From the NCBI RefSeq assembly GCF_000142905.1, contig NW_013657650.1, positions 131,388 through 195,387 of the forward strand: a DNA stretch of 64,000 bases, written 5' to 3'. The position numbers and the translations under genes were made by a program. Positions 10,963 to 36,100 of this stretch are shown one piece after another. This stretch comes from Thecamonas trahens ATCC 50062. Taxonomy: Eukaryota; Protista; Apusomonadida. Below the pieces are notes generated by a model. The model had not been told where the DNA came from, searched no databases, and saw only the letters and a program-made list of their open reading frames with translations. Position 1 is the first letter of the stretch. Each line of letters starts with the position of its first letter.

Positions 10963-13900
10963 TCATTCATTGATGACATCGTCAACTAGCCGGCACAGTC
11001 CATCTATCAGCCCGCTTCGTGTCGACTCTTGCGCCACGTCCCAAGAGAGCTTGAGTGCACACGCCGCCCGAGGCCGGCCGCAGAGGACAAGGCCGGCCAC
11101 CATCACATCGAGATCGGCACGGGCCACGTCGCCCAATGACGGCTGCGCTCCCGCGATTTGATCACGGAGGGGAGGCGGCAGCGTCGGGGGGTTCAGCGCA
11201 TCGCGCGGCAGCGCCCGCTCCACCAGCAGCGCTACCGCAGCCTGGATTGCCGCGCGGGAAATCGGCTTGAAGAGGCAGAGGTCCATTCCAGACCGCAGCG
11301 CCTCTTTCTCGGCTCCCGTGTCTGCCGTCACCGCAGAGATCGGCAGCCGCCTGTCGCACTCGCCATCGCACTCAAGCATGCGGAGCTCTGCTGCCGCTGC
11401 ATAGCCGTCCTTGACAGGCATGTGGCAGTCGAGGAGAACAAGGTCAACCGCGTGGCAGTCGGCGTTCAGCTGGCTCAGCATCTCGTCGCCGTCGCACGCC
11501 TCGGCAACCTCGGCTGACATGTTCGCGAGCAGTGCGGAGAGAACCATTCGGTTCACCTCGATGTCATCCACAACTAGCACCTGAAGCTTGCCGCCAGGAA
11601 GCTGCGAGAACTGGAGCATGTGTTCGACCTCGGCCACCTTCGCTCGCACCAGCGCCCGACATGCCGCGTCCATCAGATCGTCGCGGTCCACAGGCGGTGC
11701 CAGAACCTCGTCAAAGCCATCAACATTGCCGAACACGTCGTAGTCATCAACCACCGCAGCCAGGGTGATACCATCTGGGTTGCCGAGCGCTGTTCGTGCC
11801 GTGTGTGCCAGTTGCGGGAGCCCGTTGCTCCCGTGCGAGCCATCGATCATCACCAGATGCGGCAGCTGGTGTTGTGCCCGCGCCCGCCCCAATGCCAGCA
11901 TCATCTGCGCCCCGCTTCGGCATGTCACGACTTGCGTCACACCCATAGCGGCGAGTGTCGCCACTAGACCAACCTTATCGCTGACGCATACCACCGAGAC
12001 CGAGGCTGCCAGGCCGCCGTCGCCACACGCGTCTAGCACGCTCCGATGGGAAGGCCACGAAATGACGGCATCAAGTTCGGATCGGCTTAGTGTCGCTGAC
12101 GCTGACTGTGACGTTGACACAGTCGACTGATCTCCGAGCGACAACTCGCGCGAGTACGACAAGTGTCGTACGCGATGCCTCGCCCGCTGCCGTTTCTTGC
12201 TGACGCTGTGAGCATGGGCCGGTACACCGTCGAGCACTGCAAGCGCGGCCTGCAGGACTCGCAGCCGCCCGACGTCCGATGCCACCGTTGCCACCGTGCT
12301 CTTCAGCCCACTCTCAGTAGCACTTGCAGCATTGCCTGCCTCGCTTTCGCCAATCACAATGAACCGCGTTCCGAGTGCGAGCGGACTTGGGTTGTACCGC
12401 CCCAGCGAGTGCAGGACAGCCCACGCATCCAAAATGGTCTCATCCGGATCGAGGATGACGAGACTATATGGATCGCCAAATGAAGCGGCGTCGCGGATTT
12501 CGACCAACGCGTCGAAAGGGTCTGCCAATCTCACCACGTCGGTCGCCCGGACTGGTGCCTCTTGAAAGTGTTGGGCTAGCCACGCCGCCCGTTTGGCATT
12601 TGCCCCCACCACCAGAATCGACGCCTCCTGCAGCGGCCGCACATCTCCAAGCACGCGCGCGTGTTGCGCTGCCGTATCTTGCACCGCACCAAACACAAAC
12701 GTGGCGCGGAACGCCGACCCAAGGCCCGGTGCAGAGTCAACACTCACATCTCCGCCACAGAGCCGGGTCACCTCCTTGACAACCACTAGGCCAAGCCCAG
12801 CACCGCCGTGCTTGCGCCTGATGCTGCCATCGGCCTGCTCAAACGGAGCAAAGACTCGCTTCACGAGCTCACTGCTCATCCCGATTCCAGAATCGGCCAC
12901 GGTCACCGCAATCTCCACAGGCAGCACCGCCGCCCACGGAACGTCAGCCTCGCTGGTAGTCGCCGGTGCATCATCGTCGTCAGGCTCAGAGTCAAAGAGA
13001 TGCGCGGCGTCGTTGCAAGGCACTGCCCCAGGCAGTTTGACACCGTCACCGGCCGGCTTCACTCGCACCGCAAGCCGAATTTGGCCGCGCTCGGTAAACT
13101 TGACCGCGTTCGAGATGAGGTTCATGAAGACTTGCCGGATCCGTCGCGAGTCGCCAACACACAAAGGCGGCAGCTCGAGGTCCGCGCTCACCCGCGCGAT
13201 GGATACCGCATCTTTGCCCGCCGCCACAAGGGCATTCGAGAGCATAATCTCCATGTCGTCAAGCAGCGCCTGGATCGAGAAAATCTGGTAGTGCAGCGCG
13301 AGATTGCCCGAGTCGGCCTGTGCAAACGTGAGCAGGTCGTCGAGGAGTGAGAGCAGGGCGCGCGCAGACTTGTCAATCACCGTCATGTTCTCACGCTGGA
13401 CCGTCGTAAGCGCAGTCGACTGCATCGCCGACGTCATGCCGAGCACCCCGTTGAGCGGCGTTCGGAGCTCGTGCGAGATGTTGGCGAGAAACTGCGCCTT
13501 GGCCATGACTCGCTTCTCCATCTCGCGCCGGGCTGCAGCCTCCAGCGACGCCCGCATCCGCTCTGACACATCCACCAACGTCGTGGTAAACCGTGGACAC
13601 CCATTGGCATCCATCTTGCGTTCCACAACAACGTCGACAGGCACCAGGGTCCGTCCATCGTAGCATGCCCGCGCGTTGCGGACCACCACAGCCAATCGAC
13701 GGCCATCTGCCAGCCGTGAGTCCGAGTCACTTCGCTGGAGCTGCATGCTTATGCCCTTGGGTGCGGCTTTCGGCTTCTCATGCACATCCGCCGAAGCAAG
13801 CGTCTCGATCCGCAGCGCAATCTCGTCCGAAAGTCAAACGACGATTCTGGCAAAGTGTCTTCATCGTCGTCCGAGGGCAGCTCTCCGCCGTCGAGTGCCT

Positions 13901-14824
13901 CGAGCCGGGCCGTGACTTGAGACCACAGTGAGTCGAGCGAGGGGACAAGGCCGGCCAGTGGCGAGCCAACCAGGTCTACAGACTCGGTCCGACCGAGCTG
14001 GCGGAGCGTAGCCATGTTGCAGCTTAGGACGATACCGTCCTCGGCGCACTCGAGGTAGGCATCACCCGAGGCTGAGAGAACTTCACGGAGCTTGTGTTCC
14101 GACGCCGCCAGCGCAGCCTCGCGCTCGGCCATCTCGGTGATGTCGCGCGCCACGCAGTACTTGTAGTTGTGATCGGACGAGATCGACCACAGCAGTTTCT
14201 TGTACGTCCCATCCTTGGCCATGATGCGATTGGTAAAGGTGACGAGCTTGACGCCGCCCTGGTTAACCTTGCGAACCATGGCCATCGTCTGCGCTTTGTC
14301 GTCAGGGTGGTTGCGCTCCACAAGCGGAATGGCCTTTAGCTCCTCCTCGCTCCATCCCAGCACCTCGGTCCACATCGGGTTGATGATCTCCAGACATCCG
14401 CGGTAGTTGATGAGGCAGAGCATGTCGAGCGACTGCTCAAAAACTGGTGGAGCGGGCCGCGAACAATGTCGACCGCCCGGCTCTCGCCGACGACCACCAC
14501 CAGCCGGGGCTCGTCCACGCACGCATCAAGTCTAAACTCGAGCTGGCCCTTGTGACTCTCGATCGCAAACTGTGACTCGCCAGTCTTCCTGCAAGCTTCT
14601 TGGATGTCGCCTGCGTTGACATCCCACTCGGCAGCGGCGAGCAGGTCAATCATGGCCGTGTTCGCCACAACCAGGTCAGAGCCGCAGGTCGCCACCGCTT
14701 CGGCAGACAAGCCCGTGCCGGTGAGCCATGGGCTTTCGGGCGGAGTCTCGTCCGGCGGCACCGGAACAAGGGCCACAGGGAATGGTGAGAGTCGTGCAAA
14801 GGCCAGCGCCCCCTCCACATTCAT
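10963..14824 (-). CDS. Cytoplasmic hybrid histidine kinase: PAS-PAS-HisKA-HATPase-REC(x3, last intact); 3 ORFs joined by 2 frameshifts
   Basis: FLANISHELRTPLNG H-box, NLISNAVKFT, DSGIGM, FEQAD, GAGLGL; terminal receiver VLVVDD...LDCHMPVKDG...TA...KP; PAS (F)FEQSLDMLC...INPMW..VLGWS; breaks at A5 14439-14443 and A3 13830-13832. Confidence 0.9.
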
Positions 14825-15085
14825 TGTCGCCGCCAGGTGGTAGGGGTGAGGGGGGGGTGGGGGGGTGAGAGCCGTGTGACGAACGAGCCATGGCACCGAA
14901 CGTCTTGGCCGCGGTAATTGGCGCAAACGCTATCACGTGTCAAATTGTAGTCAGATCGCGTCCACGTGTGGTCCACCACTGGTCACAGCGAGTCAGCTAC
15001 TGTGGCCGGTGCCCCCAACGGCGACCCTGCCTTTGTTGGAGCTGCAATTGGGGCAGTTGGGGGAGGCGAGAACCGGCTGCTGGCG

Positions 15086-16438
15086 CTACGGCTCGGGCTC
15101 GTCAAAGCGGAGCACAATGTCGTACTGCGAGAGCTCGGCGCGGAGCTTGACAAGGTCAGAGTAGAGGTCGGCGAGCTGGGCCTCAGTGGCCGTGAGCGAG
15201 ACCTGGCCACGCATGGTGAACTTCTCGCCGTAAGACGTCGAGGCGTGGGCGGTGTCCATATCGTCGATGGCAAGGGCGTGCTTGGCAAAGAACTGCGCCA
15301 GGTCGCGGACAAGGCCCGGACGGTCTGGCCCGTACAGCGAGAAGAAGGCGCGCCGGATGGCTGCGCCGGGTAGTGGTGCGGTGCTCGGCAACGCGTCGAT
15401 GCGCTCTATAAATTGCGAGACATCCGCGGTTGTCTCGGGATCCGACGCGTCCGACTCGGTCGAGCCTGCAGCCTCAGCCGGCCACTCGCTCTCAGGCACA
15501 CGCACGACGACGTTGAGGCCCGAGGCGAGGAGCGCCTCGCGCAGCTCGTCGTAGTGGCCGCGATCGACGGCCACCATCATGATGTACGCAGCCTCGCCGC
15601 CGAGCTGGATCATCTTGGACTCGTAGCAGTTGCCGCCAAAATCATGGACCATGCCAGCAATGCGCGGGAGGAACGAGACGTCGGCGCCTGGGCCGACGGC
15701 TGAAATGACCACCCGCATGTTGTGGACCGAATCATACTGGAAGAGCCGGATCGAGTCCTGCAGCGCCCGACCCTGGTTGCCCAGAAAATCGGCGTCATCG
15801 TCGACAAGTGACTCGGCCTCCATGGCCCCGCGCATGGCCGAGAGAATGCATGTCCACACCAGTGAGGTGCACGCCACAAACGGGATGCGGAACCAGAGCG
15901 GCGAGACGGTAAAGTTGATGATGGTGGCTGGGACCCAGATCTTCCACAGCGCAACCATGTCGCTCGGCAGGTTGCCCACGTACTCGGCCCGAGCCTGGGC
16001 CACCGACCCGCCGTTGACCAACACCTTGGTCCCATAGAAGGCTGGAAAGTACATCAGCGGATGGTGGACACACTGATCCAGGCCGACCTGGGCGAGCATG
16101 GTCCGCAACCCGCGGGTGTCCTTGAGCCGGGCCCGGATGGGCTTGGCCAGCCACTGGGTGGTGTACGGGAAGATCCGCTGGAAGACCGGCACGTACAGCG
16201 CGTACTGGATGGCTCCGAGATAGACAAAGCCAAAGAGCGCAAACGAGGCGTTCCGCCTCCAGTCCATCGTCTCCCTCTTCTCCACCACCTTTTGGATCAG
16301 GCCGTCAGCAAACGAGGTCTTGCAGCCGGAAAACACCATACCAAAGGCAAACGGCCGCTCTTTGGGCACTCGCAGCGCTCGCGCAGCAACCGCACGCATC
16401 CCTGCCCGGCTCAGCACACTGCTCGCTGCTGCCGCCAT
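15086..16438 (-). CDS. Mpv17/PMP22-family membrane protein fused to two C-terminal GcvR-like ACT domains
   Basis: N-terminal Arg/Ala-rich presequence; ADGLIQ...DWRRNASFALFGF...DQCVHHP...WKIWVPATIINF..PLWFRIPFV..SLVWTCILS; ACT1 VVISAVGPG...GGNCYESKMIQLGGE; ACT2 LYGPDRPGLVRDLAQFFAKH. Confidence 0.88.
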   Translation of the reverse strand: MAAAASSVLSRAGMRAVAARALRVPKERPFAFGMVFSGCKTSFADGLIQKVVEKRETMDWRRNASFALFGFVYLGAIQYALYVPVFQRIFPYTTQWLAKPIRARLKDTRGLRTMLAQVGLDQCVHHPLMYFPAFYGTKVLVNGGSVAQARAEYVGNLPSDMVALWKIWVPATIINFTVSPLWFRIPFVACTSLVWTCILSAMRGAMEAESLVDDDADFLGNQGRALQDSIRLFQYDSVHNMRVVISAVGPGADVSFLPRIAGMVHDFGGNCYESKMIQLGGEAAYIMMVAVDRGHYDELREALLASGLNVVVRVPESEWPAEAAGSTESDASDPETTADVSQFIERIDALPSTAPLPGAAIRRAFFSLYGPDRPGLVRDLAQFFAKHALAIDDMDTAHASTSYGEKFTMRGQVSLTATEAQLADLYSDLVKLRAELSQYDIVLRFDEPEP

Positions 16439-16819
16439 TGCTGCCCCACACCACTCCTCGCTGTGAGTTGGGTGCCGTTCCAGCTGCCAAGCCGTGCGCG
16501 TGGGCGAGCGGTGGTGGTGACTCACCAACAGCACTCGCACACGTAGTCATGATGGGGGGGTGGGGGGTGGGGGGTGGAATAAAAATTGTTTGGACATGGG
16601 GGGAGGATGACGGGAGGCTGAAGGGGGTGGTTGATGCTGTTGGATCCCTCGCCCTCGCCCAAGTCACGCACACACTCGCTCCTCCTTCCCCCCTCCTCCT
16701 GCTCACTCTGCTTTCGGCTCCGTTCTCTCGTACTGAACCACCACTCTTCACCACCACCACCACCCCCGCCACCACCACCACTCTCTCTCTCTCTCTCCCC
16801 TCCCCCCTCTACCATCACC

Positions 16820-18082
16820 ATGCACCGACCGGCGTCTGCAGCTGGGTGGCTGCTGGTCGTGGCTCTGCTCGCACAGGCGGGTGTGGTGCTTGCGGCGACG
16901 GGTGGTGCCACAAGCGGCGGGCATGTGAGCGGGACAGGACTGGTAGTGCTCGCCAACATGACAAGTGCGACGGCAACAAGTTCGTCGTCTGGATCGACAT
17001 CGGCTGCGAGCCCGCCACCACCAGCACACAATGCGACGACGACGGCGACGGCGACAGCGACGGCGACGACGACGGCGACGGCGACAGCGACGGCGACGAC
17101 GTCGGGCGCGACAGGCTCGACCGGCGGGCCGGGTTCGCCGCGATTCGACGTCAGCACGCTGGACATTGTGGTCATTGCCTGTATCACTGGCCTCTGTCTT
17201 CTTGTGGTTGCCCTCGCCATTTTCAAACTCATCACTACCTCGCGCCGCCGCGAGTACATCCGCCTCCGCAACTCGCTCGACATCGACGCTGCCCACGGCG
17301 GGGTGCCGAGCCGAGCCGTCGGTATCGTGGCCAAGGCCACCGGTGTTGGTGCGAGCCATGGCTCGCCACGCCAGTACTCCTCGGGCGACCCTCTCGCTGG
17401 CAATCAGCGCGCCATTACTGCACCGCTGTATGGAACGACCGAGTCGGTCGACATCAACGGCGATGCGTCTGCGGTCGAGGTCCTCCGCGACTCGGGCGTG
17501 GTGTACTCGGTGGGAACGGTCCGCGACCCGGCACGCGGCTCGGTCAACCAGTCGATCATGCGCACGATGTCTGCGTACGAGCTCTCGCGCGGCATGGTTG
17601 GCCCGGCCTTACCCGCGCCGTCGGCGCCCAACTCGGGCCCCGGCTCGTCGGCTGCGCCCTCGCCGCGCCACTTTCTCCTTGCGCCCAATGCTCCTCTTGC
17701 TACTGGCACCGACTCTGACTCGGCCCGCACCTTTGAACCCGATGTGTTTGACGGCGCCGACATGGGCGAGGGCGGCCGGCTCATTGCCACCGAGACCTCG
17801 GCCCTCATCTCGCCGCGCCGCAAGAGCAGCTCGCGCTCGTCATCGCGCGTCGTCTCGCGCCAGGGCTCGCGCCAAGGTTCGCGCCAGAGCTCGCGCCAGG
17901 GCTCGCGCCAGGGCTCGCGCCAAGGTTCGCGCGATCCGTCGCCGACCTCACGTATCCCGACCGTCGTCACCATCCCCACCATCAGCGAGGTACCCGACTC
18001 GCCGTCCCCTGCCACTCATGCTGTTCCCGCTATTCCCGCCATTCCTAGCCCCGCCGCCGCACCGCAGTCAGGCCCGACATAA
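16820..18082 (+). CDS. Type I single-pass membrane protein with mucin-like Thr/Ala ectodomain and SRQG-repeat cytoplasmic tail
   Basis: Signal peptide WLLVVALLAQAG; N-glycosylation sequons NMT and NAT; TM IVVIACITGLCLLVVALAIF followed by basic RRR. Confidence 0.7.
   Translation: MHRPASAAGWLLVVALLAQAGVVLAATGGATSGGHVSGTGLVVLANMTSATATSSSSGSTSAASPPPPAHNATTTATATATATTTATATATATTSGATGSTGGPGSPRFDVSTLDIVVIACITGLCLLVVALAIFKLITTSRRREYIRLRNSLDIDAAHGGVPSRAVGIVAKATGVGASHGSPRQYSSGDPLAGNQRAITAPLYGTTESVDINGDASAVEVLRDSGVVYSVGTVRDPARGSVNQSIMRTMSAYELSRGMVGPALPAPSAPNSGPGSSAAPSPRHFLLAPNAPLATGTDSDSARTFEPDVFDGADMGEGGRLIATETSALISPRRKSSSRSSSRVVSRQGSRQGSRQSSRQGSRQGSRQGSRDPSPTSRIPTVVTIPTISEVPDSPSPATHAVPAIPAIPSPAAAPQSGPT
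17033..17100 (+). repeat. Coding Thr/Ala repeat (GCGACG-based)
   Basis: Encodes ATTTATATATATTTATATATATT. Confidence 0.85.
17855..17932 (+). repeat. 12-bp coding tandem repeat (TCGCGCCAGGGC) encoding (SRQG)x6
   Basis: Directly visible. Confidence 0.9.
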
Positions 18083-33183: not shown

Positions 33184-36100
33184 ATGGGAACCACCGTGTC
33201 CAAGACGCTCACCACAGCGGTAGGAACAACCGCTGCCGAGAAGCGCTCGTCCAATGCAACATGGGAGAAGAGGCTGGCTGCGTGCCGTGATGATGACCTC
33301 AAATGGTACACCCATACCCTCCCTCCCCCCCCCCCCCTCCTTNNNNNNNNNNNNNNNNNNNNNNNNNNNNNNNNNNNNNNNNNNNNNNNNNNNNNNNNNN
33401 NNNNNNNNNNNNNNNNNNNNNNNNNNNNNNNNNNNNNNNNNNNNNNNNNNNNNNNNNNNNNNNNNNNNNNNNNNNNNNNNNNNNNNNNNNNNNNNNNNNN
33501 NNNNNNNNNNNNNNNNNNNNNNNNNNNNNNNNNNNNNNNNNNNNNNNNNNNNNNNNNNNNNNNNNNNNNNNNNNNNNNNNNNNNNNNNNNNNNNNNNNNN
33601 NNNNNNNNNNNNNNNNNNNNNNNNNNNNNNNNNNNNNNNNNNNNNNNNNNNNNNNNNNNNNNNNNNNNNNNNNNNNNNNNNNNNNNNNNNNNNNNNNNNN
33701 NNNNNNNNNNNNNNNNNNNNNNNNNNNNNNNNNNNNNNNNNNNNNNNNNNNNNNNNNNNNNNNNNNNNNNNNNNNNNNNNNNNNNNNNNNNNNNNNNNNN
33801 NNNNNNNNNNNNNNNNNNNNNNNNNNNNNNNNNNNNNNNNNNNNNNNNNNNNNNNNNNNNNNNNNNNNNNNNNNNNNNNNNNNNNNNNNNNNNNNNNNNN
33901 NNNNNNNNNNNNNNNNNNNNNNNNNNNNNNNNNNNNNNNNNNNNNNNNNNNNNNNNNNNNNNNNNNNNNNNNNNNNNNNNNNNNNNNNNNNNNNNNNNNN
34001 NNNNNNNNNNNNNNNNNNNNNNNNNNNNNNNNNNNNNNNNNNNNNNNNNNNNNNNNNNNNNNNNNNNNNNNNNNNNNNNNNNNNNNNNNNNNNNNNNNNN
34101 NNNNNNNNNNNNNNNCCCCTTCCCCCCCCCCCAAACCCCCGCATGCGTGTCACACCATCCTTCCTTTTTTCCCGCCGGCCTTTCTTCCACATCCCGACTC
34201 ACCACCACCATGACCACCACCATTTCTATCACCATCCTCTCGTATCAGGCTCTCGGAAGATCTTCTGCATCGCATTCTCGAGTCGGAAAACATCCTGCGC
34301 GAGCATGTGCCCGAGGCCGAGTCGTCGACGAGCACTTCGGTCGATGAGCTCGAATTTGAACGTGTACGGGCGGTGAGCACTAGTGATGGAAGTGACGGAG
34401 CTGGCCTGCCTAATCTTGTGGGGCTAGTGGCGAGCTCGGGTGTGACCAACATCATCGATGCTCAGCTGGCCCGCCTGGTGGCCCATGCCGCCACCTGGTC
34501 GTCTGCCTTTCAGGAGGTGACTCAGGCCCGGTACGCCATCGTCCTCCGTGTCCTCACCTCGGTCACCAACCAGTCGCGTCGTCTCGAGCTGGCCAATGAC
34601 TCGGACGGAAGCGGCGAGGGCGGTGAGGGCTCGCCGGAAGACGCGGCGTCCAAGCTCAACCCGCTGCCGGACGCCAACCGTCCGCAGGCCAACCTTGGCA
34701 TGCAAATCGCCATCAAGGTCTTCCTCTCGGTGGTGGCCAACACCGATCCGTCTGGCGCGGCTCCGGCAGTTGAGCAGCTTCTCGCCCTTGTCTCAGGCTC
34801 CAAGGTTCTCGACCTCGCCAACGAGGACGACGACTTTCTCGATGCTCTGGTTGCCTGGCTCGTTGCCGTCCTCGATGCCGACGCCGTGCCTGAGGCGCTC
34901 GCCACCGGCGCCGCCACTGCTCTTCTCACCCTCGCCGCCTTTACTGGCTTTCAGGGCCGCATGCTTGACGCGATGGCTCGCCTCGTGGCCCACCCAGCAG
35001 CATCGGACGTTGCCCCGGCGTATGTCGATGCGCTAACCAAGATCTCGGCTTTCAAGACCTCGCTGGAGCTCGGTACTCTCGCCAACTCCTCGCCGCTCGC
35101 GCATCTGGCCTTCAACGCCGACCTCGCCTCCGAGCTCAAGGGAAAGGCGCTCTCGGCCGACGCTCGAGCGTCAGTGGTCTCGGACGGCGCTTATCTTTAC
35201 ATCCACGACGCACGTGGCTTGCTCAAGGTTGGCACCGGCCTGCAGGGCTCGGCGCCCGGTCACGTCTACTACGCCGACCGCAAGTTCTACCCCGACGCTC
35301 ATCTTTGGCTTTCCGTCATCGCAGGCTCACTCTACGTCCGCTCTGCTGCTCTCTCGGACAACGCCGTCTTTGAAGTGTACGACACGGCCGACCTTGCTTC
35401 GCCACACCGCATCGTCACTCCGTCTGATCTCCTCATCACCACCTCTGATCCACAGATGGCAACCCTCGCTTCGTCCGCGTTTGTCCCCGAGTACGACTGG
35501 AAGACTGCTGCGCTCGCCGCCAAGAATACCACCTGTAGTTCGTCTACTGGGGGTTTCGGCATGCACTTTAACTGCCAGTCTTGCAACTACGCGAGGGTCT
35601 GTGCCGCCTGTGCCGCAGAGTGCCACAAGGGCCACAACCTCGTCATGGACGCCAATGAGTCATACTCTTACTGCAACTGCGCTGCCCGCGCGCTCGACGC
35701 GGACCCCAGGCCGTGCCGTACCCGCCCCCTGCCACATTGGGGCACCCTCTCCGCCGCCTCGCCGTCATGGTCCGACGGCCGCTATCTCTACATCCTCACT
35801 CTCCGCCCCAAGCCCGACGACCTTGTTGCCCGCGAGGAGCGGCGCCTTGCCAAGTGGCGCGCAAAGCGCGCAAAGATTTTTGCCAAGGCTGATGCCAAGC
35901 TCGCCGCGTCTCGTAACGCTGCTGCGGGCACTGACGCCGGCGCGTCGTCGTCAGCCGCTGCCGCTGCTGCCGCTGACTCCGACACTGCCGACTTGCCCGC
36001 AGACACCGACGCCGCCGACGACATCGACGACACCGCGTCGGATGGATCGCTTGACCGCTTCGAGATCGACGGCAGTCGTGCCCGCCCTCGCCGCGACATC

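What the first reader, a model, noticed from the sequence alone, without database searches (positions are those of the whole stretch)
15086..16438. Mpv17/PMP22 channel fused to tandem GcvR-like ACT domains: candidate amino-acid-regulated organellar pore
Seen: one uninterrupted ORF with no intron or frameshift. It encodes an Arg/Ala-rich presequence, a complete Mpv17/PMP22 membrane domain, then two ACT domains (~15718-15090; VVISAVG..GGNCYESKMIQLGGE and YGPDRPGLVRDL). Known: Mpv17/Sym1/PXMP2 are small stand-alone channel-forming proteins of the mitochondrial inner or peroxisomal membrane with poorly defined substrates. The two-ACT layout matches bacterial GcvR, the glycine-cleavage regulator, and ACT domains bind amino acids allosterically. 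Inference: a Rosetta-stone fusion suggesting a ligand (Gly/Ser?)-gated Mpv17 channel, which would hint at what this family transports.
Basis: partly seen in the sequence, partly recalled or inferred. Interest (0 to 1): 0.85.

Follow-up and report, generated by a model that had tools for sequence, protein, structure and literature searches.

The report
Mpv17 pore fused to ACT sensors
A real single-exon gene of the protist Thecamonas trahens joins an Mpv17/PMP22-type organelle membrane domain to two ACT small-molecule-sensor domains. The fusion is conserved in many algae, and sister proteins carry calcium or cyclic-nucleotide sensors at the same place, which suggests ligand-controlled Mpv17 pores that no paper I could find has described.

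Summary
Window 15086-16438 (-) is one open frame of 450 aa. It has an Mpv17_PMP22 membrane domain (aa 29-204), a linker, and two ACT domains (aa 240-313 and 360-445). The window is Thecamonas trahens.

More than 100 homologues have the same architecture. They come from haptophytes, diatoms, a pelagophyte and a green alga, and include complete transcripts, so the fusion is not an assembly or annotation artefact. A family profile matches the two solved GcvR-like tandem-ACT proteins (1u8s, 2nyi) at E about 1e-19 across both ACTs, and AlphaFold2 gives two confident beta-alpha-beta-beta-alpha-beta units.

New here: the membrane part belongs to a distinct Mpv17 subfamily (156 clusters at E<=1e-30). 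In other lineages this subfamily carries EF-hand pairs, tandem cyclic-nucleotide-binding domains, PP2C or a RING at the same C-terminal position, or nothing. A slot that takes different sensors is the best comparative argument for a ligand-regulated Mpv17 pore.

Not supported:
- a conserved cleavable presequence
- any assignment to mitochondrion or peroxisome
- glycine or serine as the ligand

Gating itself remains inference, and the domain-docking prediction gave no verdict. I found no paper on this architecture, although databases already hold it under automatic names. I rate it a new variant of a known kind, of moderate to high interest.

The parts
15086..16438 (-). Complete single-exon CDS: 450 aa plus a TAG stop at 15086-15088, starting at ATG 16438
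   Evidence: 99% identical to NCBI Thecamonas trahens protein P0001
16355..16438 (-). N-terminal basic Ala/Arg/Ser-rich segment, aa 1-28. It is predicted helical and is not conserved in length among homologues.
15827..16354 (-). Mpv17/PMP22-type membrane domain, aa 29-204. It has five long hydrophobic or amphipathic helices. Polar residues K40, D45, Q49 and R62 are invariant, and E53, D160 and R184 are nearly invariant, across the subfamily.
   Evidence: domain-only model pLDDT 93.4, pTM 0.84
15839..16021 (-). Pfam PF04117 Mpv17_PMP22 match, aa 140-200
15722..15826 (-). Acidic linker, aa 205-239, with a short helix before ACT1. Model confidence here is low.
15500..15721 (-). ACT1, aa 240-313 (ACT_6 match at aa 243-305). 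The beta1-alpha1 loop is degenerate compared with the family's GPDRxG motif.
   Evidence: aligns to the SerB2 ACT domain: Z 7.1, rmsd 1.5 A over 76 residues
15362..15499 (-). Acidic, disordered insert between the ACT domains, aa 314-359. It is specific to the apusomonad-like sequences.
15104..15361 (-). ACT2, aa 360-445, with a canonical GPDRPG loop
   Evidence: 2nyi: Z 8.3, rmsd 2.4 A over 89 residues; PurU ACT: Z 7.7

Best explanation
The gene encodes a member of a conserved protist and algal family. In this family an Mpv17/PMP22-type organelle membrane domain is covalently joined, through a flexible linker, to a GcvR-like pair of ACT domains.

Shown here:
- the architecture
- its conservation
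- the ACT folds
- the strong constraint on the membrane domain
- the existence of sister proteins of the same Mpv17 subfamily with EF-hand, cyclic-nucleotide-binding, PP2C or RING modules at the same C-terminal position

Inferred:
- The membrane domain forms, probably as an oligomer, a solute or ion pore like PXMP2, MPV17 and Sym1.
- The ACT pair binds a small metabolite, most likely an amino acid whose identity is unknown, at its beta1-alpha1 loops. Through the linker or through ACT-mediated oligomerisation it changes the open probability or assembly of the pore.
- The C-terminus probably faces the cytosol or the intermembrane space, where Ca2+ and cNMP signals act.

The organelle (mitochondrial inner membrane or peroxisome) is not determined.
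For: Architecture.

Conservation: of the 120 best homologues, 115 carry PF04117 plus PF13740. They come from Diacronema, Pavlovales, Chlamydomonas eustigma, Seminavis, Pseudo-nitzschia, Nitzschia, Chrysophaeum and Attheya, and include MMETSP transcripts marked 'type:complete'. ESM Atlas clusters show the same architecture.

GcvR-like ACT pair: profile E 1.5e-19 and 2.8e-19 to 1u8s and 2nyi over both domains. Foldseek ranks the same two first. The packed pair resembles the Ile/Val-binding regulatory domain of threonine deaminase (Z 12.3). The family conserves the GxDRxG and GxDxPG loops.

The membrane domain is the most constrained part: mean pairwise identity is 65%, against 38% and 29% for the two ACTs. 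Its intramembrane polar residues are invariant and shared with the stand-alone and other-fusion members.

Sensor slot: in the same subfamily (E 1e-31 to 1e-42 to the window's membrane domain) there are EF-hand fusions (Amorphochlora, Bigelowiella, complete transcripts), two-cNMP_binding fusions (a Gymnodinium smaydae transcript), and PP2C and RING fusions.

Phylogeny: ACT fusions form one clade (SH-aLRT 98). A single origin is not rejected (p-AU 0.80). The cNMP clade is separate (SH-aLRT 100).

Literature: MPV17 is described as a non-selective channel whose gating depends on voltage, phosphorylation and redox state (PMC10558772). Pxmp2 is a size-selective pore of about 0.6 kDa (PMC2662417).
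Against: There is no functional data for any member. Docking of the ACT pair onto the membrane domain was not predicted: the whole-protein pTM is 0.50 and the linker is disordered, and complex prediction scored 0.00, which is no verdict.

In Thecamonas and its nearest relative P0002 the ACT1 ligand loop has lost the DRxG motif. A Thecamonas paralogue has let its ACT part decay to a remnant, so the module is dispensable in some contexts.

PP2C and RING partners are not ligand sensors, so the C-terminal slot may simply be permissive for fusions.

Channel activity of Mpv17 proteins is itself debated, and this subfamily is distant from MPV17/Sym1. The other Thecamonas Mpv17 paralogue that gave a BLASTP hit is only 26% identical.

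Topology (4 or 5 membrane passes) is unresolved, so the side on which the ACT pair sits is unknown.
Confidence: 0.5

Rival explanations
1. Membrane-anchored regulator. The ACT pair is the working part. As with bacterial GcvR and GcvA, it binds and controls another protein in a ligand-dependent way, and the Mpv17 domain mainly places it on an organelle membrane.
For: GcvR works by ligand-sensitive protein-protein contact (Heil et al. 2002, cited in PMC4894688). No contact between the ACT pair and the membrane domain was predicted. PP2C and RING fusions in the same subfamily look like enzymes tethered to a membrane.
Against: The membrane domain is the best-conserved part (65% against 29-38%). 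It keeps invariant charged and polar intramembrane residues also found in stand-alone members, which is more than an anchor would need. No partner is known.
Confidence: 0.2
2. Structural or oligomerisation module. The ACT pair dimerises subunits and sets the stoichiometry or stability of the Mpv17 complex, without physiological ligand control.
For: ACT domains commonly form dimers (general knowledge; the PDB entries 1u8s and 2nyi each hold two chains, which does not by itself show a biological dimer). MPV17 and Sym1 act in high-molecular-weight complexes (PMC6166979). The ACT1 loop is degenerate in Thecamonas.
Against: Most family members conserve both glycine-rich ligand loops. The alternative partners, EF-hand and cNMP-binding domains, are classic ligand switches.
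Confidence: 0.15
3. One reading: a glycine- or serine-gated mitochondrial Mpv17 channel linked to the glycine cleavage system.
For: The best solved sequence relatives include a putative GcvR (1u8s). ESM Atlas neighbours are named GcvR family. Glycine binds E. coli GcvR (reference in PMC4894688).
Against: The resemblance is to the broad ACT_6 family. 2nyi, a protein of unknown function from a red alga, matches equally well. The ACT pair alone has no detectable close relative. No residue-level ligand signature could be tested. The organelle is unassigned, and N-termini are short in most homologues.
Confidence: 0.1
4. Artefact: two adjacent genes merged by a missing stop, an assembly error or read-through.
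For: No Thecamonas RNA read was found that crosses from the membrane domain into ACT1. Metatranscriptome contigs cover only 15033-15321 and 15536-15817.
Against: The frame is uninterrupted. More than 100 independent homologues have the same order of domains, including complete transcripts and annotated genomes. A contig from an independent run of the same organism spans 15559-16351 without joints.
Confidence: 0.02

Closest known systems
MPV17 / Sym1 / PXMP2 (Pfam PF04117 Mpv17_PMP22) channel-forming organelle membrane proteins
   Same: Both match the family HMM above the cut-off and have a compact helical membrane domain of about 180 aa. Neither has a long cleavable presequence; MPV17 and Sym1 lack one too (PMC10558772).
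   Different: This protein belongs to a distinct, divergent subfamily: 156 clusters at E<=1e-30, and only 26% identity to the one other Thecamonas Mpv17 paralogue that gave a BLASTP hit. It carries a C-terminal regulatory module of about 245 aa. The known members are small stand-alone proteins whose gating is ascribed to voltage, redox state and phosphorylation.
Bacterial GcvR and GcvR-like tandem ACT proteins (PF13740 ACT_6; PDB 1u8s, 2nyi)
   Same: Both have two ACT domains in tandem with the same motif pattern in ACT1. The profile match covers both domains at E about 1e-19.
   Different: This one is fused to a membrane protein and is eukaryotic. There is no GcvA-type partner. It has a long acidic insert between the two ACTs, and its ACT1 loop is degenerate. 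Its ligand is unknown.
Channels and carriers with appended cytosolic sensor domains: CLC and MgtE with CBS pairs, CNG/HCN with a CNBD, the mitochondrial carriers Aralar and SCaMC with EF-hands, and AmtB with GlnK (from general knowledge)
   Same: The logic is the same: a membrane transport domain plus a soluble ligand-binding module on one terminus. The sister EF-hand and cNMP fusions of this subfamily use the very same sensor types.
   Different: The membrane folds are unrelated. Regulation here is inferred, not measured.
Threonine deaminase and aspartate kinase regulatory ACT-like pairs
   Same: The modelled ACT pair packs like these amino-acid-binding regulatory domains (Z 11-12.3 over about 150 residues).
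   Different: Those pairs regulate a fused soluble enzyme. Sequence identity is only 10-15%.

Membership tests
Mpv17/PMP22 (PF04117) | Match to the family HMM above Pfam's gathering score | tested here: met
   49.9 bits against 27, E 3.3e-13, aa 140-200. All 36 aligned homologues match too.
Mpv17/PMP22 (PF04117) | Compact polytopic helical membrane domain of about 180-200 aa (4-5 passes) | tested here: met
   The AF2 domain model has pLDDT 93.4 and long helices at 29-52, 60-89, 108-141, 146-178 and 181-210. The number of true membrane passes is not resolved.
Mpv17/PMP22 (PF04117) | Pore or channel activity in a membrane | not testable with these tools
   This needs reconstitution. No solved structure resembles the domain (best Z 6.9, within noise).
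Mpv17/PMP22 (PF04117) | Location in the mitochondrial inner membrane or the peroxisomal membrane | not testable with these tools
   The N-terminus is basic but short and not conserved. The diatom homologue P0038 (Seminavis robusta), read by eye, starts about 25 residues before the first membrane helix and shows no obvious signal-peptide-like hydrophobic stretch, which argues against a secondary plastid. No prediction tool was run.
GcvR-like tandem ACT (PF13740 ACT_6) | ACT_6 HMM match above the cut-off | tested here: met
   ACT1 scores 35.5 bits against 23. ACT2 alone is below the cut-off in Thecamonas (PF01842, 16.8 bits against 27), but all 36 family members match ACT_6.
GcvR-like tandem ACT (PF13740 ACT_6) | Two beta-alpha-beta-beta-alpha-beta domains in tandem, alignable to solved GcvR-like proteins over both domains | tested here: met
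   Profile A1 against 1u8s residues 5-180 at E 1.5e-19 and 2nyi residues 3-174 at 2.8e-19. Z is 7-8 per domain and 12.3 for the pair.
GcvR-like tandem ACT (PF13740 ACT_6) | Binds glycine | not testable with these tools
   No ligand-bound GcvR structure was available for comparison. The ACT1 loop is degenerate in the window protein.
GcvR-like tandem ACT (PF13740 ACT_6) | Soluble stand-alone protein of about 170-200 aa acting on the LysR-type regulator GcvA | tested here: not met
   The pair is covalently fused to a membrane domain. It is the only ACT_6 match in the whole genome. The organism is a eukaryote. It is therefore GcvR-like in fold, not a GcvR.

The most novel reading that the evidence does not exclude
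A whole subfamily of Mpv17-type organelle pores in protists and algae is gated by soluble signals through interchangeable C-terminal sensors: an ACT pair for a metabolite, EF-hands for Ca2+, and CNBDs for cAMP or cGMP. This would be the first evidence that Mpv17/PMP22 pores can be ligand-gated. It would also give experimentally tractable members with known ligands for defining what this disease-linked family conducts.
Probability: 0.35. Interest if true: 0.8.

Novelty: new variant of a known kind. Interest (0 to 1): 0.62.

Why it matters
MPV17 is a human disease gene (mtDNA depletion syndrome). Its molecular function, and that of PXMP2 and Sym1, is still disputed: what passes through the pore and what opens it are open questions.

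Natural fusions to sensor domains are Rosetta-stone evidence that relatives of these proteins are regulated by soluble ligands. They also supply test systems. The EF-hand and cNMP versions have known ligands, so gating can be tested directly in bilayers. The ACT version is abundant in ecologically dominant phytoplankton (diatoms, haptophytes), and it could link amino-acid status to organelle permeability.

The limits are that the subfamily is divergent from human MPV17 and that nothing has yet been measured.

Tried and rejected
- The ACT pair alone (aa 234-450) was searched against 5.8 billion proteins. No hit reached E<=1e-3, so no close stand-alone donor was identified.
- A single-sequence search against PDB sequences gave only noise. 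The family profile was needed.
- Complex prediction with the Mpv17 domain against the ACT pair scored 0.00. That is no verdict and is not evidence either way.
- The membrane-domain model was compared with 48,161 PDB chains. The best Z was 6.9 (glypican, an ECF S-component, Tim22), within the noise for helical bundles, so no fold assignment was made.
- RNA evidence in Thecamonas: only three short metatranscriptome contigs, 99-100% identical (0-1 mismatch), lie within the CDS, and none crosses from the membrane domain into ACT1. Runs X4-X7 are of unknown library type and look genomic, because one of their contigs runs on past the 3' end of the CDS beyond the start of the laid stretch.
- Literature searches for Mpv17 with 'ACT domain', EF-hand or cyclic nucleotide-binding found nothing relevant. 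A plastid-localised Mpv17 protein of ochrophytes (PMC5462543) is probably a different paralogue.
- The notes of this scan held nothing on this locus.
- Rejected: that the hits of about 340 aa are a one-ACT class. They end exactly at the start of ACT2 and look like gene calls cut at an intron.
- Rejected: the NCBI upstream exon.

Full report
**What is there.** On the minus strand, window 15086-16540 is one open frame. The first ATG is at 16438, in a good initiation context. An in-frame TGA lies further upstream with no other ATG between, and the stop is TAG at 15086-15088. The product is 450 aa.

It is 99% identical to a Thecamonas trahens ATCC 50062 protein that NCBI names 'peroxisomal membrane family protein' (P0001). 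The window is therefore from this apusomonad, whose assembly is 28.7 Mb with about 64% GC in the window.

The NCBI model is 489 aa. It replaces the first seven residues with a spliced, low-complexity Val/Ala-rich exon taken from the antisense of a GC-rich repeat upstream. All 35 aligned homologues start about 10-25 residues before the conserved PFAFG motif.

**Domains.** Pfam finds the following:
- Mpv17_PMP22 at aa 140-200 (E 3.3e-13, above the cut-off)
- ACT_6 at aa 243-305 (E 9.4e-9, above the cut-off)
- a weak ACT match at aa 369-396

NCBIfam gives only weak ACT-type matches to the second domain.

AlphaFold2 with a 36-sequence alignment (mean pLDDT 81.8) gives these segments:
- a helical membrane domain to aa 203 (pLDDT about 90)
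- a disordered acidic linker
- ACT1 at 240-313
- a disordered acidic insert at 314-359
- ACT2 at 360-445

Both ACT units have the beta-alpha-beta-beta-alpha-beta order and pLDDT of 85-95.

Structure comparison supports the ACT assignment. Foldseek ranks 2nyi (a Galdieria tandem-ACT protein) and 1u8s (a putative Vibrio cholerae GcvR) first. VIA-align gives Z 12.3 for the packed pair against the Ile/Val-binding regulatory domain of threonine deaminase, and Z 7-8 with rmsd 1.5-2.4 A for each ACT alone.

A profile of the family matches 1u8s and 2nyi over both ACT domains at E 1.5e-19 and 2.8e-19. Its own refutation test, 'the C-terminal half does not fold as ACT', fails to refute.

**Is the fusion real and conserved?** Yes. 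A search with the whole protein found 232 homologues. Of the best 120, 115 carry PF04117 plus PF13740. Named sources are:
- haptophytes (Diacronema lutheri, Pavlovales sp.)
- a chlorophyte (Chlamydomonas eustigma)
- diatoms (Seminavis, Pseudo-nitzschia, Nitzschia, Cylindrotheca, Attheya)
- a pelagophyte (Chrysophaeum)
- a dinotom
- several MMETSP transcripts marked 'type:complete'

ESM Atlas holds clusters with the same architecture. Hits of about 340 aa stop exactly at the start of ACT2 and look like gene calls cut at an intron.

For Thecamonas itself the RNA evidence is thin. Three short metatranscriptome contigs from three studies are 99-100% identical (0-1 mismatch) to 15033-15321 and 15536-15817. 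None bridges the last membrane helix and ACT1. A contig from an independent run of the same organism spans 15559-16351 without any joint, but that run is probably DNA.

Single-transcript status therefore rests on the uninterrupted frame and on the orthologous transcripts.

**A distinct Mpv17 subfamily with a C-terminal 'slot'.** I searched with the membrane part alone (aa 1-211) against 1.84 billion cluster representatives. It gave 2593 hits at E<=1e-3 but only 156 at E<=1e-30. These 156 share 35-70% identity with the query.

By contrast, the only other Thecamonas Mpv17 paralogue that gave a BLASTP hit (L001) is just 26% identical.

I classified these 156 with a local ACT HMM and with Pfam. 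They fall into these groups:
- tandem-ACT fusions
- many stand-alone proteins of about 200-250 aa, for example from Chlorella ohadii and Astrephomene
- EF-hand-pair fusions: Amorphochlora amoebiformis, Bigelowiella natans, and complete MMETSP transcripts
- fusions to two cNMP_binding domains that resemble PKA regulatory subunits: a complete Gymnodinium smaydae transcript and two metagenomic proteins, one of which also carries an EF-hand
- single PP2C and RING fusions

A tree of the membrane domain (120 rows, quick IQ-TREE) puts the ACT fusions in one clade with SH-aLRT 98. The non-ACT rows inside that clade look like truncated calls. An outlying pair sits elsewhere. Forcing all ACT fusions into one clade gave a better likelihood (p-AU 0.80), so a single origin is not rejected.

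The cNMP fusions sit in a separate clade (SH-aLRT 100). The EF-hand fusions are scattered over three or more separate places outside the ACT clade. The same C-terminal position has therefore been filled repeatedly, mostly by classic ligand-switch domains.

**Constraint.** Within the ACT clade, mean pairwise identity differs sharply by region:

| Region | Mean pairwise identity |
|---|---|
| Membrane domain | 65% |
| Linker | 26% |
| ACT1 | 38% |
| ACT2 | 29% |

Polar or charged residues inside the helices are invariant or nearly so across the whole subfamily, whatever the C-terminal module. These are K40, T41, D45, Q49, E53, R62, Q78, D160, R184, S200 and R203.

The DQxVHHP motif is tightest in the ACT clade. 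This is what a working transport domain would show, rather than a mere anchor.

In the ACT part the family conserves the glycine-rich beta1-alpha1 loops, GPDRxG in ACT1 and GxDxPG in ACT2. These are where ACT domains usually bind ligands (established knowledge).

Thecamonas and its closest relative P0002 have lost this motif in ACT1 and carry an extra acidic insert of about 45 aa between the ACTs.

Thecamonas also has a close paralogue (L005:1108-2007, 299 aa). It is sister to the window protein in the tree, and only a degenerate ACT1-like remnant survives in it. PF13740 occurs nowhere else in the genome.

**How it most likely works.** The literature describes Pxmp2 as a size-selective pore of about 0.6 kDa (PMC2662417). 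It describes MPV17 as a non-selective channel whose gating responds to voltage, phosphorylation and redox state, with no cleavable presequence (PMC10558772).

GcvR is the model for the ACT pair. Glycine binding changes its contact with a partner protein (Heil et al. 2002, cited in PMC4894688).

Putting these together, my best explanation (about 0.5) is a pore whose opening or assembly is controlled by a metabolite bound to the ACT pair.

Three steps are inferred, not shown: pore activity, ligand binding and coupling. Whole-protein pTM is only 0.50, and the docking test of the two halves gave no verdict.

The sister EF-hand and cNMP fusions suggest that the C-terminus faces the cytosol or the intermembrane space. 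Charge bias puts the N-terminus and the 86-112 loop on the positive side. The region 160-203 may cross the membrane once or twice, so the side of the ACT pair is open.

The organelle cannot be assigned. The N-termini are short and basic, with no conserved presequence. The one diatom homologue I read by eye (P0038) shows no obvious signal peptide.

Glycine or serine as ligand is only a family-level guess (about 0.1).

**Rivals.**
- A tethered ACT regulator acting on another protein (0.2).
- A purely structural oligomerisation module (0.15).
- An artefact (0.02).

**Comparison and novelty.** It is a member of PF04117 by sequence and predicted fold, but in a divergent subfamily.

It is GcvR-like in fold and profile but not a GcvR. 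It is fused, it is eukaryotic and it has no GcvA system.

It resembles in logic the CLC-CBS, CNG-CNBD, Aralar-EF-hand and AmtB-GlnK systems (general knowledge).

Full-text searches of about 8.4 million papers and preprints found nothing on Mpv17 joined to ACT, EF-hand or cNMP-binding domains. Databases, however, already contain these proteins under automatic names. The membrane domain has no convincing solved structural relative.

I therefore class it as a new variant of a known kind. The architecture is not unique to this genome and not categorically new, but it is uncharacterised, and together with the sensor-slot pattern it gives a testable handle on a long-standing question.

Noticed in passing
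window 16438-17403 (-) and NCBI protein P0001: The public gene model (489 aa) splices a 45-residue Val/Ala-rich exon from the antisense of a GC-rich repeat onto residue 8 of the ORF. No homologue supports it. ATG 16438 has a good initiation context and matches the homologues' starts.
   Followed up: partly
L005:1108-2007 (+) = G000 contig C23, about 347188-348087: This is a close paralogue (54% identical in the membrane domain; 299-aa ORF, annotated as XP_013757892 at 273 aa). Its C-terminal tail aligns to the linker and ACT1 of the family profile but no longer scores as ACT, and it lacks the DQxVHHP motif. It looks like a lineage-specific duplicate that is losing its sensor.
   Followed up: yes
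proteins P0159, P0187, P0190, P0196, P0236, P0245, P0258 (EF-hand); P0163, P0189, P0316 (cNMP_binding); P0249 (PP2C); P0328 (RING): The same Mpv17 subfamily carries other C-terminal modules in chlorarachniophytes, dinoflagellates and uncultured eukaryotes. P0316 combines cNMP-binding domains and an EF-hand. P0168 (501 aa) has a 263-aa tail with no Pfam match.
   Followed up: partly
window 10963-14926 (-): Directly downstream on the same strand lies a hybrid histidine kinase (HisKA, HATPase_c, receiver) preceded by PAS domains. It is spread over three overlapping ORFs in different frames, so it probably contains introns or frameshifts.
   Followed up: partly
window 16631-18082 (+): A 483-aa Ser/Thr/Ala/Pro-rich ORF with one hydrophobic segment and a repeated SRQG tail has no Pfam match. 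It overlaps the antisense stretch used for the doubtful NCBI exon.
   Followed up: no
window 33343-34115: A run of 773 N (assembly gap) explains the apparent low-GC block in the composition profile.
   Followed up: yes
window 15011 and 15058: A contig from an independent run of the same organism has single-base insertions (C, G) relative to the window, just 3' of the stop codon. These are either assembly errors or strain differences in the 3' UTR.
   Followed up: no
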